A DNA stretch of 64,000 nucleotides from Entomortierella parvispora E1425 (taxonomy: Eukaryota; Fungi; Mortierellomycota), in NCBI GenBank assembly GCA_020891255.1, contig BQFW01000001.1, positions 1,054,001-1,118,000 on the forward strand, read 5' to 3'. Below, piece by piece: positions 7,068-61,732 of the stretch. The notes under the pieces were generated by a model. That model did no database searches. It was not told the DNA's origin and worked only from the letters and a program-made list of their open reading frames with translations. The translations under genes were made by a program, and so were the position numbers. Position 1 is the first letter of the stretch, and each line of letters starts with the position of its first letter.

Positions 7068-8099
7068 TTACAGCAATCCAAGCGCTTCCTTAAGACTTTG
7101 GAGGTGAATCTGGACCGGAACATCGGCGCCGTTCAGCTTCATACGGACGGTCCTGTAAGGTTCCCGTTCCAGTGCTTCTTCATTTCGTCGTTTTTCTTGG
7201 AGGGTACGGGCCATTGCGTCCAGCTGCTTGGCCTCCCTGAATAGATCTGTTTGAGGCAAAACAAGGATCTCGGTCGGTGAGGGGAACGAGGGAAGACTGG
7301 CCAAATAGCGAGCAAAGTGGGATTCAGTGATGGCCCCCATTGGGTCCAATCGTTTTTGGCTGACGGCGTCAGCGATCAAGGCATGCGCTTCATCCAAACG
7401 AGCCTTAGAAGGCTCTGGAGTGGGAGGTATAGCGCTGGGGGTAGCGTCACCAGTAGTACCGTTTGCAATCTTGCGAGCGGTGGGCAATGCCGCGACCACT
7501 TTCTTACCAGCTGTGGCAGGTGGGCTGGCCTGGGTCTTCGCGGGCACGGCAGAGGCAGACGCAGCAGAGGACGAGGACGAGGACGCCTCATTTGAGATGG
7601 CAGCAAGAGCGGCCAAAGTTGTGATAGGGGTCTTGACCTTCCTCAACTCAGCATTGGCAGATACAAGGTAGATAAAGAGATGAACACATACAGGGTCGCG
7701 AAGCATTTCCTTGGAGACTCGCTTGTACGATACTCTCCAGGCCTTCTCCATCCTGGGACGATAGTTCTCCTCAGACATCTCCCTGTACTTCTTCTGAGGG
7801 GTGGTATGGGCGGGCTGGAGGTACGGGCGCGCATCTTCGGGCCAGTCGCGTCCAGGAACTTCAGGGAGGTGGGTACGGATAAGGTGAATAAGGTGATCAA
7901 ACGATTCTTCCTTGATATTATATTGAAACGGAGCAGGGTTGGGCAGGTCCTTGGTAGAGCGGCAGCGGACTAGGGGTTGACCCTTACGCAAATGGAGCTG
8001 GATCAGGATAACAGGGGGGACGTCGATGGATTCATCGTGGTCCTCGTTCTCGTGATGGGATCCAGAGTGGGAAGACGCGGGCGAGGCAGGGGATTCCAT
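7068..8099 (-). CDS. Intronless protein of unknown function (two structured-looking blocks joined by an A/S/T/P linker)
   Basis: Long uninterrupted ORF; the first true ATG is at 8099 (MESPASP). The track start at 8171 is a non-ATG extension in a pyrimidine-rich leader. Confidence 0.75.
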   Translation of the reverse strand: MESPASPASSHSGSHHENEDHDESIDVPPVILIQLHLRKGQPLVRCRSTKDLPNPAPFQYNIKEESFDHLIHLIRTHLPEVPGRDWPEDARPYLQPAHTTPQKKYREMSEENYRPRMEKAWRVSYKRVSKEMLRDPVCVHLFIYLVSANAELRKVKTPITTLAALAAISNEASSSSSSAASASAVPAKTQASPPATAGKKVVAALPTARKIANGTTGDATPSAIPPTPEPSKARLDEAHALIADAVSQKRLDPMGAITESHFARYLASLPSFPSPTEILVLPQTDLFREAKQLDAMARTLQEKRRNEEALEREPYRTVRMKLNGADVPVQIHLQSLKEALGLL

Positions 8100-53828: not shown

Positions 53829-54026
53829 ATTATGCAATCTCATCCAAAGTGTACTTCTGTTTGTGTTTGATCTGTGTAACTATGCTGATACCTTATTTTC
53901 TTGTTTTTTCATGTTCTGCAGTGGACCCAAGGCCAAGTAATCAAGCAACATACTATCCCCCTTCAAACAAGCATACAATAAAACGCAGCATTTCTCCATG
54001 TTTTTTTCCCTTTTTTACTGACTTAG

Positions 54027-54034
54027 ATCACGTG
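54027..54034. promoter_or_regulatory. ATCACGTG E-box upstream of the R/S-rich gene
   Basis: About 35-70 bp upstream of the ATGs at 54068/54104. Confidence 0.4.
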
Positions 54035-54067
54035 CCGGTTCCTACTTGCACATGCGATTTCAAGATC

Positions 54068-55678
54068 ATGACCAACGCGCGTGCCAAATTGCATTCTACA
54101 ATCATGTCCACCCAAAAGGATACAACATCGTCCAAAAAAGCTCCCAACACTCTGTCCTCCATCGTATCTAACCTTGTACGCTCCGCAATCGGTGGAGGAA
54201 ACAAGCACGATCATGTGCCGGACGAGGATCTGGACAAGTATGTCGCCGACATGATTATGATGTCTGCGGCGGAATCCCGCGCAAAGTACGAAAAGTATGG
54301 TCTGACTGGGAGTAAGACAACGGGATCAGATATTGGCCCATCATCATCCAACGACAAAATCAAGCTGGCTTCTGGAGTCGTCATAGATCGAGCAGATAGC
54401 AACGGACTCAAAACCAACAAGCGATTCCTATCCTCCATCATCAAGAACACCGATAGTCACAACCAGGCGCTGATTCGATCCGAGGAGAAAAGGGCCGCCG
54501 AAGCCGCAAAGGAGCTCATCGCCGATCTGGATCGAAGAGCTGCAGAACGCGAGCGAGAATCTGGAAGAAGAAGACCAAACACAGAAAGGATGTATCGCCC
54601 GGAGGATTGGAGGCATCCGGATAGACTCTTGTCATCGTCCAAGTCGTCCAAGTTGTCATTGTCGTCGAGATCCAAAGCCCGAAACTCTGACCCACCTCGA
54701 TCTGGTAGAATGCGGATGGATGAAATCAGTGTAGAGGGTGAAACCGAGTCTGGAAGCGGGAAGGTAAACCAGAGCGTTTTCAGCAAAAGTGGTGGAGATC
54801 TAAAGGCGGATAGCGATACATGGAAAAAAACGCCTCAGTCCCCAGACTCAGGATCCGAATCCGGATCCGAATCCAGCATATCCCCATCTTCAGACTCAAA
54901 GACGAGGTCGAGGTCAAGTAGATCTAGGCTCTGGTCGATATCACCAGAGGACCACGACCGGAAGAGCAAGGGGAAGGGTTCCGACCACAGTCGTGATCAT
55001 GACAGACCCGAGGGCATTTCGTCGTCAAGAACAAAATCGGAGTCGTCGTCAAGAACAAAATCGAAATCGTCGTCATCCTCGGGTTCAAAGCTGGGATCTC
55101 GGATGGATAAGTATTTTCAAGAGGGGTATGATCCACTTTTGGACGTTCACGATGAGGATGAGGGCAGCAGAGCGTACACCACTCATTCGTCTAAAAATTC
55201 CAAAAAGAGTAAGAAGCGAAAGAGCACTCGGAAGGAAGAGAAGTCGAAGAGGAGCAGCGATGGCAGTAGTCGACACAAATCCAAACGCCACCGTCATCGG
55301 TCAGAAAGCCAGGGATCGGGGGACGATGAGGATGATGAAAAGTCGGAAAAAAGAAGGCGCAAAAGTCGTCGGAGGGACGACACTGACTCGGAGGATGAAC
55401 AAGAGTATGATAGAAGTCACAAGACCTCGAGTTCACGGTCATCAAGGAGTCATCGGAAGAGTCATAGGGGGGACTCTGATTCGGACACGAACAATAAGGA
55501 AGCCGAAAACCGGAAAGGGTCATCTTTGCGGTCTTTGAAAGGTAGCTACACAGAGGATGAGGATCGAAGGACATCATCAAAAAAGAAGCACAGTTCACGT
55601 CGGTTGGACTCTGGATCTGAAAGTGATGTTGGACGCAGGGAATCCTCGTCAAGTCGCGCAAAGAGGCGCCGTCATTGA
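54068..55678 (+). CDS. R/S/K-rich nuclear protein with a conserved N-terminal DEDLD..A..KY..G / TNKRFL..IIKNTDSHN block, intronless
   Basis: ATG at 54068 or 54104. Structured-looking N-terminus followed by about 350 aa of S/R/K/D low complexity containing MDKYF..GYDP.LDV. Confidence 0.8.
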   Translation: MTNARAKLHSTIMSTQKDTTSSKKAPNTLSSIVSNLVRSAIGGGNKHDHVPDEDLDKYVADMIMMSAAESRAKYEKYGLTGSKTTGSDIGPSSSNDKIKLASGVVIDRADSNGLKTNKRFLSSIIKNTDSHNQALIRSEEKRAAEAAKELIADLDRRAAERERESGRRRPNTERMYRPEDWRHPDRLLSSSKSSKLSLSSRSKARNSDPPRSGRMRMDEISVEGETESGSGKVNQSVFSKSGGDLKADSDTWKKTPQSPDSGSESGSESSISPSSDSKTRSRSSRSRLWSISPEDHDRKSKGKGSDHSRDHDRPEGISSSRTKSESSSRTKSKSSSSSGSKLGSRMDKYFQEGYDPLLDVHDEDEGSRAYTTHSSKNSKKSKKRKSTRKEEKSKRSSDGSSRHKSKRHRHRSESQGSGDDEDDEKSEKRRRKSRRRDDTDSEDEQEYDRSHKTSSSRSSRSHRKSHRGDSDSDTNNKEAENRKGSSLRSLKGSYTEDEDRRTSSKKKHSSRRLDSGSESDVGRRESSSSRAKRRRH

Positions 55679-55931: not shown

Positions 55932-58245
55932 ATGATCATATGGGTTCTCTCTGGCGCGAGCCATTGTTTCACCTACTTCGCTGCATTCTCATTCGTGCTG
56001 ACATCCGCGCTTGGCTCACTTGTCCTATCCACGACAGCTCTGGCGCAACAGCTTCTGCTTCTACTTCTTCCATCTGATGGGCACAAACGCTTCCAGAGCC
56101 TTCAACTGGATCTTCGTCACCTCCGTAGGACCCCAGCATCGGTTGTGGCCCTTCAACTTCCAGAGATAGTTGATTGTATCCTTAGACAGCTGCCACAAGG
56201 GTCACTCTGTCATTCTCGTCTTGTTTGCCGGTTGTGGGCTGAGTGTGGGCATCGGTTTCTACAGCATTCAATTCGTTGGTCCACCTCTGCCATGTGGGCG
56301 ATTCCAGGCATGGGGAAAGGGGCGTGTCGGGTAACGCGACTGCAGGACTGGATCGACACCACAACGACTCTTCGATGTAAAAGCGACCACCCAAATGTCC
56401 AGCACCACAATCAAATAAGGGGTGTCGAGATCAAGTGGATAGAGCTCATGGACGCTTTGGAAACCATGTCATTCCCACAGAAACGGCGTATATCTGACCT
56501 TTTCCATGATGGATCCGAAGAGGTCAATGAGAGCAAGACTCAAGTAACGAGGCCGTACTTGCGCGAGGTTATCCTGGACCTTGGTGGAGAATGTCCTTCA
56601 CGTTTCCGACGCATGTTGCCATATCTAACTCAGATCACAGCTCTGGACTTGCGCACCACATACACCGATTCCTGTTCCATAATCGAATGGATCCATCAAT
56701 TACCCAACCTCATCTCCCTCAGAGTGGAGAGTCACAGTTCGCTGAGAATCCAATACTTGCCGCTCTTGCCCCCAGCAACCCAGCGACCCGCAAAGCACGG
56801 GCCACTAGTGCTGCAGAATCTTGTCCTGCAATTTGTATTGGTTACTGAAGATACACTTGAAGGTCTGCTGTCCATGTCCCCAAATCTTCGGATCTTCAAG
56901 GTTCTTGAAGTTCGGGGCCCTGCTTCAGAGGCAGGACAGCCAGATCCGCTTGCATTCTGTCGATCGCGCTCAAAATATTTCCAGCACGTTCACCAGATGT
57001 GTCCTCTCCTAGAGTCTTATCATTTTTCGATTTATCCCGAGAGAGTCGATGACCTGTCATCTTTGATAGAAACAATGTCTGCAAGTAACGTTAGTCGGTG
57101 GCAATTTACCGCAGACAACTTCAAGAGCTCTGCTTTCCAAGGTCTTCGTGGAACCGTTGGTCAGACCCTCACTGACTTGGAGATCACCTTCGACAGAGCG
57201 GGAGATTGTCACGAGCAATTGCACGGTTTCCTTTGCCACGCCCCACATCTGCTTCACCTCAGAGCGCATGCGACAAAATTTCCAATGGAGTATTTCTACG
57301 AGGTCCCTGGTTCAAATATGAACCTAATGGCTTGGGGTCATAGTAAACTCATCTGTCGAAATAGCGATAGAGAAGAGTGGGTGGCACCCTCGGGGCGGTG
57401 GGCTTGCAAAAACCTGAGAACACTTCACTTACGATTGGCCTCTAGTGAAAACTGGGGAATGAACTCATGGAACGGTTCTGAAGCTTACAAGATCATGCAC
57501 CGACTAGCGGGAAACTGGACGAGAAACACGCTGGCGTATATCAGCTTCGTCTGCCCAAAGGTAAATTTTTGTAACAAAACGATATTTTGATGTCTTATTC
57601 ATGTCTTCTGATACTGGATATGGTCCCTGTTTTTTCTTACAGATACAAGATCTTCAGTTGGGCTACGACATGGATCTCTCGGAAGAAGGAGGACTGTTCC
57701 TTCTCTCAAAACTAGATCGTCTCGAGAAGCTGGTCCTGTGTTCCAAGACCACGTCAATAGAGTCGATTGGATTCAAGGATCTAGCTTGGTTAGCGCGACC
57801 GTCAAGACTTTCAGAACCATGGGACATGATAAGGCACAAGAAATTGGATCTGGAGCTGCTGGGAGCTGCTGTAGCTGGAGGGCTGACTCTCGTCCTGCCT
57901 CAGCGTTCAAGACAAGCGACTGCAAAGCGACGAATTTATCGAGCATTCGATCCTAATGAGAAGCGACGGATCCCTCCTTTCGATCATAAAGAGAGTTCGT
58001 TCGATGATGACGGTGATGTCCTTCGCCATCTTCAGTCGTCGCCACTGGCGATCCACGAGCAGCGAGCACGGAACCAAGAGAAGCTTTGTTGGCCAAAATT
58101 AATTCAATTTGTCGTAGTGCTGGACCCCATCATGCGGGTGCAGAGTCAGCCAGGATGTTTGAAATTCACAAGACTTGTTAATCGACTTCGGCCCGAAGTT
58201 GACTTTCGAATGGTGCCCTCAGGAGGCTGGGAGCTTGATCCTTGA
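55932..58245 (+). CDS. F-box-like / degenerate LRR protein, at least 2 exons; start uncertain
   Basis: F-box-like ALQLPEIVDCILRQL..SRLVCRLW; MSPNLRIF, MCPLLESY, WACKNLRTLHL. The intron 57561-57642 joins VCPK|IQDLQL. C-terminus has WPKL..F and LRPEVDF. Confidence 0.8.
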
Positions 58246-58601: not shown

Positions 58602-59041
58602 TCTTTGTTCCATTCCATTCTTTGTCCTTTGTTCCACTCTCTACCCACTCATTCCCATCCCGTCGTTGTCCCTTTGTGGCGCCCCGCTCCTTGTCTGACT
58701 CATTAGCCTCCTGTCTGTGCTCTTCTCTGACTGCCAAAAGCCCCTTGACATCTGCGAATAGCGCAGTTCGAAAAAACCAGTGCTCCATCCCCTCCCCTCA
58801 TCTTCTTCACCTGAGCGCCAGCTGATTGCTGCTACTGCATCGCTCCTGCTTCGCCTAACTACGCTTCGCCCGGGGTGTTTCCTGTCGTCTGGACTTGAAT
58901 TTCCTGTTTTTGTACCCATCCATTCTCTCGTCCCTCCATCCTTTCCCATCCCTTTCCCTGTCCTTCCTTCCTTTCCTTCCGGACCCTCGTAGAAGTGAGA
59001 TAGCGACCTTCCAGCAACTGGATTATATATAAACGTTGAAA

Positions 59042-61342
59042 ATGGCCGACAAACTCCAGCAAAAGTTTGCACTGGTGCAGCAAATGAAGAGGGTAATGCC
59101 TTAACCATGTCTCCGTCTCGTCGCGGTGTCCTCCCCTCACCATTTTTTACACCATATCACCATGTGGGAGCTGGAAAATGTAAATGAAGGTCGCTAGATG
59201 CATGGAAATAATCACTAATGTCCATCTTTTTTGCTTCTTCTCTTGGCTCGCATCCCCCTATCTCATCTCCAATCACTACCCCTTCTTTTTTCGGTTCATT
59301 TGAACTTTCCACCCCTCTTTCTATCGTGTCTTCCTTTTCCTCCAGGAAAAGGAACTGAGAGAAGCAAAAGCCAAGGAGCACAAGCCCATCGACATTTTTG
59401 CAATTGCAGGAGTCAACCTTGCAGGTCCAGTTCATCATGCTATTTCTCGCCAGGACTTGTCGAGTCCACGCCCGCCATTGCCACGACGACAGTCCACGTC
59501 AACCTCGGTAGGAGGTACTACTTTAAAGAGACCGCATTCAGAAAGAAGCGTGTCCACCTCGAGCGACAACGTCTCTCCAGAAGTAGCAAAAGCGATATCA
59601 ACGGACAGTAGTATCCCTCCTGCGTCTTTATTGTCCTCAAGTGACCTAGAGGGCGAAAGTCCGGCGGGAAAGAAATTGAAGCGATCATCAATGGCCCGAG
59701 GCACGTCAACGACCGGTCAGAGACGACCCTCGACACAAGGTCCTGGTCTTGGTCAGAATACAGGATTGCAATCACCCACTCACAGCACCTCAAACAGACG
59801 CCTGTCTACAGTAAGTAGAAGCAGCACACACCCGAAGGGTGTGGAAAGTACAGAGACACAAAGCTCAAAGGCAACTCCATTTGCTTTGTTTTGATTTTGT
59901 CGCGTCTCGTACTCGTCTTCTTCCACAAGTGCTCACGGGCTAAAATGACCTTTCTTTTTCTTTTCTGACGACAGAGCATGCCGTCAGCTCCACTGTTGAA
60001 GAACCCGCCAGCTTCCTCCTTGGCACTATCCCCCAGCCACGAGGCAGTAAGCCCTACCAATGCCACAGCCACTCCACCAACGCCAATCCCATCCCCGAGA
60101 GGCGCCAAGGAAGACACAGCGTCCACCCAGTCCTCGGCACATCACCCACATCAGCATCATCCGCCGAGGGCAGAGGTGCACCACAATTCACAGAGCCTGG
60201 AGTGCCCAGAGGGAACACCCGTAGGAGCATGTGCTCGTACCCATACACAACCACGGCGCCTCTCCTTGGATGAAAACTCTGACGATGAACGCCCGTACAT
60301 GTATGTCTTTTTTTTTTGTTCTGGATATGTGGTTGAACTTTTCAATTCTAACACGTTTAAATGGGTTTGACACTATAGTCCTCCTCACCCATCTGCTCGC
60401 ATGGCTCCCGATGCACGATCGCCCCCACCAAGACGATACAGCAGACAAGAATCTTATGGCGGCTCCAGTCAACACAGTTATGTCTCCAGATCACGTTCGC
60501 CCTCTCGCTCTCCGAGAGGTACCAGTCGTCCTCGATCATTGTCACGTTCGGACACTAGCCATCCGTACAGTCCTCACAGTGATGACTACTCTCGTTCCAG
60601 GAGTCAGGTATTAGGTTCTAATCAGCCTGGTCACGATAACCAACACCGTTACTCCCGTCGCCCCACGGAGAATGGTTACGACCGGGACATGTTCCGTCGC
60701 GACTCTGCCATGACACCCGCCTCATTGGATCCCACAGACCCATTTGGTGTCGCCAATCGATGTGTTTATGTGGGCCAGCTTCCTGCTACTACAACACTGG
60801 ATAGTCTTCAAAAGGCATTCGAGGTTTTTGGTACAATCAAGGACATTAATTTTGTCGAAGGCGTCGAATATGGATTTGTGACCTTTAAGGAGCCAGAGGC
60901 AGCACAACGTGCGGTGAATAAGGCGAGTCTGTCTAATGTCGAAGTCGATACCAAGGAGTTAAATCCCAAGGACAGTAGCCCATCAGTTGAAGAAACCAAA
61001 GGCGTCTTGGTAGACGGTGTTGCTGTTGAAGTCAAGAAGGCAAAGTTGCCCGGTTCTAGCCTGGAATCAAGTTCTGGAGACGGTGCTTACCTGAACTCAC
61101 CTCCCTACCATCCACGAAACAGCTCCTCGCCTTCAGACTTCCCGCCTTGTGTGCCCATCATGAAATCTCGCTCAGTACACCAGCTTCCTTCAAAGCCTCG
61201 CGCGGTAGTTCCGTTGCCACCGAAACCTACAGGCGCAGCCGCATTTCCTCCCGCTCTTCCTTCGACTTTATCAGCAGATGCTGCACAGACAGCCACTCTC
61301 CCAGGACGAGCTCGACAAATTTTGAGCTATGATGATCTTTAA
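59042..61342 (+). CDS. Single-RRM nuclear protein, NELF-E-like architecture, about 599 aa, 4 exons
   Basis: Exons 59042-59092 (MADKLQQKFALVQQMKR|gtaatg), 59346-59810 (..RRLST|gtaagt), 59975-60294 (or 60300), 60379-61342; total 1800 nt in frame. RNP2 VYVGQL, RNP1 YGFVTF, an RS-rich tract before the RRM, C-terminus RARQILSYDDL*. The gene model is well supported; the NELF-E label is inference. Confidence 0.8.
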
Positions 61343-61621
61343 AAGCTCCAACGACTTCCTCCCTTTTTTTTTTCTCCTCGACATGCCCATGTACCATAGT
61401 CCCCCCCTTTTTTTTGAAGATAGTTTCCTCCATAAGATATGGATTCGACTTTGTATATTTGAAAGAGATCAGGTTGTAAGGTTGTAGAGTAGTGGCAAAA
61501 AAGAGGGGTGGGTATTGTCGAGGAAATGATTGACGACGTGGTCTGTGTTTGTTTGTCTGTGCAGCCCAAAGGCGGTAAGGAGACTCGGCAACACTATTTT
61601 GTTTCCTGAGGTCAGGGGTTT

Positions 61622-61732
61622 CTATGCAGTCTTAGGGCTGTTCACTGCGACAAAGTGGTAGCCGACAATGAGCAACATGGCCAAGCAGCAGACGCCGTTA
61701 GCGAATGCAGTGAGTTGAGTATCATTCATCAT
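61622..61732 (-). CDS. OST4: Oligosaccharyltransferase subunit Ost4 (36-aa single-pass small ORF), not in ORF track
   Basis: MMNDTQLTAFANGVCCLAMLLIVGYHFVAVNSPKTA* matches the Ost4 pattern M(I)xDxQL..FAN.......L+V.YH(Y/F)VAVN.PK. A probable 5'UTR intron 61908-61733 (AG|GTACAT..CATAG) ends immediately before the ATG. Confidence 0.92.
   Translation of the reverse strand: MMNDTQLTAFANGVCCLAMLLIVGYHFVAVNSPKTA

What the first reader, a model, noticed from the sequence alone, without database searches (positions are those of the whole stretch)
59042..61342. Candidate NELF-E homolog (promoter-proximal pausing factor) in an early-diverging fungus
Seen: a hand-spliced protein of about 599 aa with, in order, an N-terminal helix KLQQKFALVQQMKREKELREAK, GGTTLKRPHSER, GKKLKRSS, an SPP/RSRS tract, RDMFRRDS, a single RRM, and the terminal RARQILSYDDL*. 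Recalled human NELF-E has the same order: ALQKKFNKLKKKKKALLALK, GGVKRSLSEQ, SGFKRSR, SPPRSRSR/RD repeat, GPFRRSDS, RRM, KRTQIVYSDD. Established: the NELF-E C-terminal peptide binds the nuclear cap-binding complex at the same site as the ARS2 C-terminal R..+.Y.D motif, and NELF is absent from S. cerevisiae and S. pombe. Inference: this lineage may retain NELF and metazoan-like Pol II pausing. At minimum this looks like an RRM protein with a CBC-binding tail. Each short match is individually weak; the argument rests on their collinearity.
Basis: partly seen in the sequence, partly recalled or inferred. Interest (0 to 1): 0.78.

Follow-up and report, generated by a model that had tools for sequence, protein, structure and literature searches.

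The report
Fungal RRM protein resembling NELF-E
A real four-exon gene of the soil fungus Entomortierella parvispora encodes a mostly disordered RNA-binding protein. Its family, found across early-diverging fungi, has the same order of parts as the animal pausing factor NELF-E, including a tail that matches the known cap-binding-complex docking motif. Descent from NELF-E is likely but not proven.

Summary
Four GT-AG exons (59042-61342, +) encode 601 aa, identical to the public protein EMPS_00296 of Entomortierella parvispora ("hypothetical protein"). Every quoted motif is present, and the recalled human NELF-E strings match a published sequence.

The gene is a fast-evolving paralogue in an unnamed RRM family. 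I found the family in Mortierellomycotina, Mucorales, Umbelopsis, Endogonales, Glomeromycotina and one chytrid.

Canonical members carry, in order:
- an N-terminal helix (L..K[FY]A.L, basic);
- a DEFGR motif;
- an RS-rich tract;
- one RRM;
- a Trp exactly 13 residues after strand β4, the same spacing as in chordate NELF-E;
- an invariant C-terminal R-x4-Y-D-D-L, which matches the RxxxxY motif that NELF-E and ARS2 insert into the CBP20-CBP80 groove.

Statistical support is weaker. Human NELF-E is the only solved protein whose alignment to the family profile runs beyond the RRM. That gain is modest, partly low-complexity, and depends on which sequences build the profile. The RRM itself is not closest to NELF-E by sequence or by fold. 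Mucorales copies lack the N-helix, and the window's copy lacks the Trp motif.

Published work places NELF-E in animals only, while NELF-B and NELF-C/D persist in early-diverging fungi.

Verdict: probable fungal NELF-E counterpart (about 0.55), and at least an RRM protein with a cap-binding-complex docking tail.

The parts
59042..59092 (+). Exon 1 (17 codons). It carries the start codon and the first half of the N-terminal helix, MADKLQQKFALVQQMKR.
   Evidence: It equals residues 1-17 of P0193. A GT donor follows at 59093.
59346..59810 (+). Exon 2 (155 codons). It holds the rest of the helix (EKELREAKAK), DIFAIAGV, the basic patch TLKRPHSER, and KKLKRSS at 59667-59690.
   Evidence: It equals residues 18-172 of P0193. 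In the AlphaFold model the helix spans residues 2-28 at pLDDT 94-95. KKLKRSSMA is conserved in all Mortierellaceae paralogues.
59975..60300 (+). Exon 3 (108 codons plus 2 bases). It is a disordered S/P/T/H-rich region with the conserved ATPPTPIPSP at 60068-60097.
   Evidence: It equals residues 173-280 of P0193. TPPTPI.SP is invariant in Mortierellaceae. pLDDT is below 50.
60379..61342 (+). Exon 4 (1 base plus 320 codons plus stop). It holds the RS-rich tract, the RRM, a proline-rich tract and the C-terminal tail.
   Evidence: It equals residues 282-601 of P0193. An AG acceptor lies at 60377-60378.
60740..61039 (+). RRM, residues 402-501 (β1α1β2β3α2, an insert, then β4). An inserted loop of about 22 residues (468-489) lies before β4. 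There is no Trp motif after the domain.
   Evidence: Pfam RRM_1, E 5e-10. AlphaFold pLDDT is 86-96 in the core and 57-74 in the insert. Canonical relatives have no insert and carry VNRAKIPERNR.GF.GV.W.
61178..61255 (+). Proline-rich tract HQLPSKPRAVVPLPPKPTGAAAFPPA, conserved within Mortierellaceae.
   Evidence: Alignment A2: H, Q, L, P, P, R, P, K, P, P, P are invariant. Function unknown.
61313..61339 (+). C-terminal tail RQILSYDDL (residues 593-601). It is the candidate docking peptide (RxxxxY) for the CBP20-CBP80 groove of the cap-binding complex.
   Evidence: R, Y, D and L are invariant across the family. The spacing and key residues are the same as in NELF-E R362/Y367 and ARS2 R854/Y859. 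pLDDT rises to 70-75 here.

Best explanation
Shown: the gene is real and encodes a 601-aa, mostly disordered protein with three folded or conserved modules. These are an N-terminal amphipathic basic helix, one RRM, and a nine-residue C-terminal peptide, RQILSYDDL.

Shown: it belongs to an unnamed RRM family present in all three subphyla of Mucoromycota and in at least one chytrid. In Mortierellaceae the family duplicated. The window's copy sits on a fast-evolving branch, while the same species keeps a canonical copy (EMPS_06767).

Inferred, and the reading I commit to: the family is the fungal counterpart of animal NELF-E and works as a flexible tether.
- The N-terminal helix docks on the HEAT-repeat subunit NELF-B.
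- The RRM holds the nascent transcript.
[quoted passage not shown] Canonical copies add a Trp motif 13 residues after the RRM.
- Together these tie the capped 5' end to the early elongation complex, until a competitor with the same motif (ARS2) displaces it.

The window's paralogue kept the helix and the tail. It lost the Trp motif and gained a loop in its RRM, so it is probably a specialised or regulatory variant of the tether.
For: - Gene model and identity with P0193.
- Family range: Mortierellaceae; Mucorales, Umbelopsis, Jimgerdemannia, Glomeromycotina and Rhizophlyctis.
- Tail: R at Y-5 in 81 of 82 distinct tails, Y in 82 of 82, D at Y+1 in 77 and at Y+2 in 80, C-terminal L. These are the residues and spacing that bind CBC in the NELF-E and ARS2 crystal structures. 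Compare Nematostella ...DPRDLLTYDDIDF and mouse ...RTQIVYSDDL.
- Trp motif: exactly 13 residues lie between VNRAK and W in 101 of 105 family proteins. The spacing is also 13 in human, lamprey and Ciona NELF-E, with G at W-4 (human, lamprey) and P at W-1 (lamprey, Ciona). W345 of NELF-E binds CBP80. In non-family proteins, a W 13 residues after a V..A[RK] site occurs at 1 of 86 sites.
- N-helix: chytrid LMERYARLKKK and Mortierella LQEKFALL compare with animal LQKKYAKLKKK, LQKKFAKLRKK and LLKKFALLKKK. The helix is predicted at pLDDT 93-95. NELF-E residues 1-138 bind NELF-B.
The C motif hits 114 of 119 family members.
- The profile of alignment A4 finds human NELF-E at E 2e-20 (74-77 bits) in one stretch, profile 5-331 to NELF-E 15-331. 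The stretch starts exactly at LQKKF, and this is the best single-RRM hit. An RRM-only profile built from the same sequences gives NELF-E under 60 bits. A profile without the N-helix still aligns NELF-E 169-331, which is the RD/RS tract plus the RRM.
- Podila paralogues without an RRM keep both the helix and the tail. This fits an adaptor whose two ends are the selected parts.
- Phyletic fit: NELF-B and NELF-C/D candidates occur in Rhizophagus, Rhizopus, Phycomyces, Coemansia and chytrids, and none in the sampled Dikarya.
- First-stage notes report NELF-A and NELF-C/D in this genome. These are unchecked.
Against: - Profiles of the N-terminus alone (A1, A5, A7) or of the post-RRM region alone (A2, A6) find no NELF-E among 177,635 PDB sequences at E up to 10.
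- A second full-length profile, rich in N-helix sequences (A10), leaves NELF-E below 50 bits. The A4 result therefore depends on which sequences are used, and part of the gain comes from R/S/D low complexity.
- The RRM is not specifically NELF-E-like. NELF-E is outside the top 60 by sequence and outside the top 50 by Foldseek.
- Mucorales and Glomeromycotina models lack the N-helix. In Mucor lusitanicus the 450 bp upstream hold no such exon, yet Mucorales have NELF-B candidates.
- The DEFGR motif and the pre-RRM helix DPY.AA.RY.DT.FY have no clear NELF-E equivalent.
- The window's own copy lacks the Trp motif.
- No binding, expression or pausing data exist, and no RNA run was listed.
Confidence: 0.55

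Rival explanations
1. A fungus-specific SR-like RRM protein involved in splicing or RNA surveillance. It acquired a CBC-groove docking peptide independently, as ARS2 and PHAX carry the same short motif without being NELF subunits. It would bind CBC and RNA, is not part of NELF, and does not descend from NELF-E.
For: - Short linear motifs such as RxxxxY occur in unrelated CBC partners: ARS2, PHAX and NELF-E.
- The fungal tail, with its upstream DPRA, resembles ARS2's DPRAIVEYRDLD as much as it resembles NELF-E.
- The RRM's best matches are TIA-1, PUF60, SPEN and RBM39/23, not NELF-E.
- The central region is RS-rich like SR proteins, and public annotators named some orthologues 'RNA-binding protein 39'.
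- Mucorales copies lack the N-helix although NELF-B candidates exist there.
Against: - It does not explain the N-helix motif shared with animal NELF-E, the Trp at identical spacing, or the fact that NELF-E is the only PDB protein aligning beyond the RRM.
- Five or six collinear elements would all have to be convergent.
- The family's range matches that of core NELF in fungi.
Confidence: 0.28
2. An ordinary RRM protein with a disordered region. Its resemblances to NELF-E are chance matches in low-complexity sequence. The conserved termini would serve other ends, for example nuclear import, a coiled-coil partner, or a C-terminal degron or sorting signal.
For: - Each motif is short.
- N-only and C-only profiles are not significant.
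- Language-model look-alikes are generic RRM clusters scoring 0.87 or less.
Against: - The invariant residues of the tail are exactly the CBC-contacting R and Y, at the right spacing and at the very C-terminus, in 81-82 of 82 distinct tails spanning Mucoromycota and a chytrid.
- A W 13 residues after a β4-like site occurs at 1 of 86 control sites.
Confidence: 0.12

Closest known systems
Metazoan NELF-E (RDBP), the RNA-binding subunit of negative elongation factor
   Same: The order of parts is the same: N-terminal basic helix with L..K[FY]A.L; a basic KRP/KRS patch; an Arg-rich repeat tract; a single short-loop RRM; a Trp 13 residues after β4 (canonical fungal copies and chordate NELF-E); and a C-terminal R-x4-Y-acidic tail. 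NELF-E is the only solved protein that aligns with the family profile outside the RRM.
   Different: - The Arg-rich tract is RS/RR rather than RD.
- Fungal copies add a DEFGR motif and a pre-RRM helix.
- They end at YDDL, without the distal xDxF-COOH found in most animals (rodents also lack it).
- The RRM is not specifically closest to NELF-E's.
- The N-helix is missing in Mucorales and Glomeromycotina.
- Mortierellaceae have 2-3 paralogues, some without an RRM.
- The window's copy lacks the Trp motif and has an RRM insert.
- Similarity outside the RRM is not statistically secure.
ARS2/SRRT C-terminal CBC-binding peptide (852-DPRAIVEYRD-861)
   Same: It has the RxxxxY spacing, hydrophobic residues at R+2 and R+3, and acidic residues after Y. 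A DPRA element also lies just upstream in most fungal tails.
   Different: ARS2 is a large helical multi-domain protein with a zinc finger and no N-terminal NELF-type helix. Only the short motif is shared, and no ARS2 chain appeared in the profile searches.
CBC effectors with a Trp-containing helix (NCBP3, PHAX, ZC3H18)
   Same: They use a conserved Trp next to a groove-binding or C-terminal motif as a two-site CBC interaction. Canonical family members carry an invariant VPW.DEDG.LA upstream of the tail.
   Different: Domain order and folds differ. NCBP3 has an N-terminal non-canonical RRM and PHAX has no RRM. The window's protein has no Trp in this region.
SR-like single or multi-RRM proteins (RBM39/RBM23, RNPS1, TIA-1 RRM3)
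   Same: They have an RS-rich tract plus an RRM, and they are the top RRM matches by sequence and by fold. Some orthologues are annotated 'RNA-binding protein 39'.
   Different: RBM39 has three RRM/UHM domains, while this family has one. None of these proteins has the N-helix or the RxxxxYDDL terminus.

Membership tests
NELF-E | Single RRM in the C-terminal half of the protein | tested here: met
   Pfam RRM_1 is the only domain. It covers aa 410-462 of 601 in the window protein, and the RRM folds at aa 402-501.
NELF-E | N-terminal helical region that binds NELF-B (human residues 1-138; motif L-Q-K-K-[FY]-x-K-L-K-K-K) | tested here: inconclusive
   A helix is predicted at aa 2-28 with pLDDT 94-95. 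The motif LQQKFALV matches animal LQKKFAKL and LLKKFALL. Profiles of the N-terminus alone do not find NELF-E, and binding was not testable.
NELF-E | [quoted passage not shown] | tested here: met
   The window protein has RSRSPSRSPRGTSRPRSLSRS. The family profile aligns to the NELF-E RD tract, residues 169-250. The repeats are RS rather than RD.
NELF-E | Trp-containing segment after the RRM (W345) that binds CBP80 | tested here: not met
   The window protein has no Trp after the RRM. Canonical family members, including this species' other paralogue P0173, do have a W 13 residues after β4, as chordate NELF-E does.
NELF-E | C-terminal CBC-groove peptide with R-x4-Y followed by acidic residues | tested here: met
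   RQILSYDDL* lies at aa 593-601. R and Y are invariant in 81-82 of 82 distinct family tails, and the motif is defined. Actual binding was not tested.
NELF-E | Significant sequence similarity to NELF-E outside the RRM | tested here: inconclusive
   Profile A4 scores 74-77 bits over NELF-E 15-331, against under 60 bits for the RRM alone. Profile A10 scores under 50 bits. Profile A12 aligns NELF-E 169-331 only. A profile-profile test against a NELF-E alignment could not be run because no referenced NELF-E sequence was available.
NELF-E | RRM most similar to the NELF-E RRM | tested here: not met
   NELF-E is not among the top 60 sequence hits of the RRM-only profile or the top 50 Foldseek hits. 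RRM subfamilies are poorly resolved, so this weighs little either way.
NELF-E | Co-occurrence and complex formation with NELF-A, NELF-B and NELF-C/D | not testable with these tools
   The evidence is indirect only. NELF-B and NELF-C/D candidates occur in other Mucoromycota, Zoopagomycota and chytrids in the Chivu et al. supplement. Unchecked first-stage notes report NELF-A and NELF-C/D in this genome.
CBC groove-binding short motif (RxxxxY class: NELF-E, ARS2, PHAX) | Arg and Tyr five residues apart, hydrophobic residues between them, acidic residues after Tyr, in a disordered C-terminal region | tested here: met
RBM39 (the name given to some orthologues by NCBI) | N-terminal RS domain plus two RRMs and a C-terminal UHM | tested here: not met
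   There is only one RRM in every family member scanned. The name is an annotation transfer based on the RRM.

The most novel reading that the evidence does not exclude
NELF-E did not arise in animals. A four-part tether (NELF-B-binding helix, RRM, Trp motif, CBC-groove tail) was already present in the common ancestor of fungi and animals, and it survives in Mucoromycota and chytrids alongside NELF-B and NELF-C/D. If so, NELF-CBC coupling, and possibly regulated promoter-proximal pausing, predates Metazoa and was lost in Dikarya. Mortierellaceae then diversified the subunit into paralogues, including versions without an RRM.
Probability: 0.45. Interest if true: 0.8.

Novelty: new variant of a known kind. 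Interest (0 to 1): 0.66.

Why it matters
The only broad survey in the searchable literature (Chivu et al., bioRxiv 10.1101/2023.02.19.529146) concludes that NELF-E arose at or just before the origin of animals, and it ties that origin to the emergence of strong, regulatable Pol II pausing. A fungal NELF-E counterpart would move that origin back to the opisthokont ancestor.

It would also make the question testable in tractable fungi such as Mucor, Rhizopus and Mortierella. Does a fungal complex with NELF-B, NELF-C/D and an E-like subunit pause Pol II, and does it hand the capped transcript to ARS2 as in animals?

Tried and rejected
- Language-model look-alike searches with P0005 and P0097 returned only generic RRM clusters, scoring 0.87 or less.
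- PDB sequence searches with profiles of the N-terminus alone (A1, A5, A7) and of the post-RRM region alone (A2, A6) found no NELF-E or ARS2.
- The exhaustive profile search of 1.84 billion representatives was swamped by multi-RRM proteins. It widened the fungal family but listed no animal NELF-E in its top 150.
- Two word-index searches with family alignments were capped at 8000 candidates and returned no NELF-E, so I obtained no referenced NELF-E sequence.
- A Foldseek search of the chytrid model returned generic RRMs.
- No RNA sequencing run was listed for the locus, so I could not check expression or splice junctions against reads.
- I rejected the annotation 'RNA-binding protein 39' because there is only one RRM.
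- I rejected RDMFRRDS as evidence because it is confined to the window's paralogue lineage.
- I looked for an unannotated N-helix exon upstream of the Mucor lusitanicus orthologue and found none.
- The neighbouring genes in the window show no functional link.
Full report
**1. The gene**

Reading 58700-61700 and translating the pieces gives four exons on the + strand:
- 59042-59092;
- 59346-59810;
- 59975-60300, ending in phase 2 (AT|T);
- 60379-61342, with TAA at 61340-61342.

All three introns are GT...AG. The minus strand carries only short ORFs. A word-index search returned P0193, 'hypothetical protein EMPS_00296 [Entomortierella parvispora]', 601 aa. A script showed that the four exon translations lie in it, in order and without a mismatch, at residues 1-17, 18-172, 173-280 and 282-601. 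The window therefore comes from E. parvispora or a near-identical strain.

Pfam sees only one RRM. An AlphaFold model built on a 32-sequence alignment shows:
- a long N-terminal helix (residues 2-28, pLDDT 94-95) followed by a short helix over DIFAIAGV;
- about 350 disordered residues;
- an intact RRM (402-501) with an inserted, less confident loop before β4;
- a further disordered stretch, with confidence rising again over the last ten residues.

**2. The family**

Relatives of exon 4 are all Mortierellaceae. Their N-termini (KLQEKFALVQQMKREKELKEAKAK..DIFAIAGV) and C-termini (HQLPPRPRSPKLPPKP...GRGRQILSYDDL*) are nearly invariant.

An exhaustive profile search, cluster look-ups and a further alignment search widened the family to:
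- Mucorales (Mucor, Rhizopus, Lichtheimia, Phycomyces, Absidia, Cunninghamella and others);
- Umbelopsis;
- the Endogonales genus Jimgerdemannia;
- Glomeromycotina (Rhizophagus, Glomus, Funneliformis, Diversispora, Gigaspora);
- the chytrid Rhizophlyctis rosea.

No Dikarya member appeared. All members are annotated as hypothetical or generic RRM proteins, and a few as 'RNA-binding protein 39', which the single RRM contradicts.

The canonical architecture is, in order: N-terminal helix; [VL]DEFGR; RS-rich tract; a pre-RRM helix DPY.AA.RY.DT.FY; the RRM; VNRAKIPERNR.GFGNVPW.DEDG; DPRA; and GR.[ILV][LT].YDDL*.

A quick maximum-likelihood tree (SH-aLRT support only, with long-branch warnings) splits Mortierellaceae into two paralogue clades. 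The window's gene groups with Gryganskiella P0022 and an environmental sequence on a long branch in clade 2. E. parvispora's clade-1 copy, P0173 (EMPS_06767), is canonical. The window type has lost the Trp segment and gained the RRM insert. A Podila lineage has copies with no RRM at all that still keep both termini.

**3. The tail**

Across 82 distinct family tails:
- R at Y-5 occurs in 81;
- I, L or V at Y-3 occurs in 81;
- Y occurs in 82;
- D occurs at Y+1 in 77 and at Y+2 in 80;
- L is the last residue.

[quoted passage not shown] The Arg and the Tyr, five residues apart, are the absolutely conserved, buried contacts. A later preprint calls this the RxxxxY motif. The fungal invariants are those two residues at that spacing, at the extreme C-terminus of a disordered region and followed by acidic residues.

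NELF-E sequences printed in the Chivu et al. supplement make the likeness concrete. Nematostella ends ...DPRDLLTYDDIDF and mouse ends ...RTQIVYSDDL, against fungal ...RQILSYDDL.

**4. The Trp motif**

In 101 of 105 family proteins that carry it, exactly 13 residues separate VNRAK (end of β4) from an invariant Trp. In human NELF-E (VNIAR + KQPMLDAATGKSV + W), lamprey and Ciona the spacing is also 13. G lies at W-4 in human and lamprey, and P at W-1 in lamprey and Ciona. Arthropods and sea urchin have 15-16.

NELF-E W345 is the residue shown to bind a pocket on CBP80. The window's own protein lacks this element.

**5. The N-helix**

Animal NELF-E reads L[TS]EEEE.LQKK[FY]AKL[KR]KKKK. The fungal helices read:
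- the chytrid: ESLMERYARLKKKIEEK;
- Mortierellaceae: KLQEKFAL[LV]QQMKREK;
- Umbelopsis and Jimgerdemannia: RLR[EQ]KKERL[QR][QK]LK.

Its only four hits outside the automatically defined family set were family fragments. [quoted passage not shown]

Against this, Mucorales and Glomeromycotina models have no such helix. In Mucor lusitanicus the 450 bp between the upstream gene and the start codon contain no candidate exon.

**6. Statistics**

This is the weak side of the case. Profiles of the N-terminus alone or the post-RRM region alone find nothing relevant in the PDB at E up to 10.

| Profile | Sequences used | NELF-E result |
|---|---|---|
| A4 | 11 full-length sequences from all lineages | E 2e-20, 74-77 bits, one stretch from profile position 5 to NELF-E residue 15 (the L of LQKKF) through to the end of the RRM; best single-RRM hit |
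| A9 | RRM only, same 11 sequences | outside the top 60 (under 60.2 bits); other single-RRM proteins score about as in A4 |
| A12 | Mucorales and Glomeromycotina, no N-helix | 48-49 bits over residues 169-331 (RD tract plus RRM) |
| A10 | second full-length set, dominated by N-helix-bearing sequences | below 50 bits |

NELF-E is thus the only solved protein that aligns beyond the RRM, and it does so collinearly. The gain is at least about 14 bits, but it owes something to Arg-rich low complexity and is not robust to the choice of sequences. The RRM itself has no special affinity for NELF-E, either by sequence or by fold.

**7. Context in the literature**

[quoted passage not shown] Term counts over their supplementary candidate files show:
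- NELF-B candidates in Rhizophagus, Rhizopus, Phycomyces, Piromyces and Coemansia;
- NELF-C/D candidates in Rhizophagus, Rhizopus, Phycomyces, Coemansia, Spizellomyces and Batrachochytrium;
- none of either in Ustilago, Cryptococcus, Neurospora, Allomyces, Gonapodya, Rozella or Conidiobolus.

Mortierella was not in their data set. The new family's range overlaps that of core NELF in fungi and shares its absence from Dikarya. That fits the hypothesis, but many genes show the same pattern, so it is not specific.

First-stage notes of this scan report NELF-A and NELF-C/D candidates elsewhere in this genome. I could not check them. Full-text searches found no report of a fungal NELF-E.

**8. Verdict**

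The gene and the motifs are real. Two modules, the helix and the tail, are under strong constraint. The tail is a textbook match to the CBC groove motif.

Six collinear elements are shared with NELF-E: the helix, a basic patch, the Arg-rich tract, the RRM, the Trp at fixed spacing, and the RxxxxY-acidic terminus. On that basis, descent from a common NELF-E-like ancestor is the best explanation (about 0.55). The main rival is an independent SR-like CBC partner (about 0.28).

The window's copy is a derived paralogue, not the canonical representative.

Noticed in passing
P0060, P0075, P0111, P0168, P0197, P0198 (Podila species; related loci, not in the window): These family paralogues of 430-548 aa have no RRM (no Pfam hit). 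They keep the N-helix, KKLKRSS, the HQLPPRPRSPKLPPE tract and the RRQILSYDDL terminus. Either the RRM was truly lost, or exons are being skipped systematically in the gene models.
   Followed up: partly
P0173 (EMPS_06767, same species, elsewhere in the genome): E. parvispora has a second, canonical copy (558 aa) with the Trp motif. Mortierellaceae generally carry 2-3 paralogues, for example M. alpina, M. claussenii and Dissophora globulifera.
   Followed up: partly
P0017 (1127 aa): This is a family member fused in its gene model to an unrelated C-terminal half (it ends ...VEAKKELEQWLEKRGVVWYFQT). It is probably a merged annotation of two neighbouring genes.
   Followed up: no
window 53849-55678 (+): A long ORF (609 aa as listed) encodes an extremely Ser/Arg/Lys/Asp-rich protein with SR-like low complexity, two genes upstream. 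I did not examine its function or its true start.
   Followed up: no
window 55932-58245 (+): Two consecutive ORFs (552 and 214 aa) with Leu-rich repeat-like sequence lie between the SR-like ORF and the gene studied. They may be one gene split by an intron.
   Followed up: no
window 58890-58990: A pyrimidine-rich (CT) tract lies just upstream of the start codon (…ccctttccctgtccttccttcctttccttcc…). It is typical of fungal core promoters or 5' leaders.
   Followed up: no
L001:3554-4000 (Mucor lusitanicus): The Mucor orthologue starts about 450 bp downstream of a CAP-Gly/ubiquitin-like gene, with no room for an N-helix exon. The N-helix therefore seems truly absent in Mucorales, although it is present in Umbelopsis and Endogonales.
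   Followed up: yes
Umbelopsis models P0038, P0202, P0204 versus P0163, P0203, P0223: Several public Umbelopsis gene models start at an internal Met (MPSPESLNG...) and miss about 85 N-terminal residues, including the helix, which other models of the same genus contain.
   Followed up: partly
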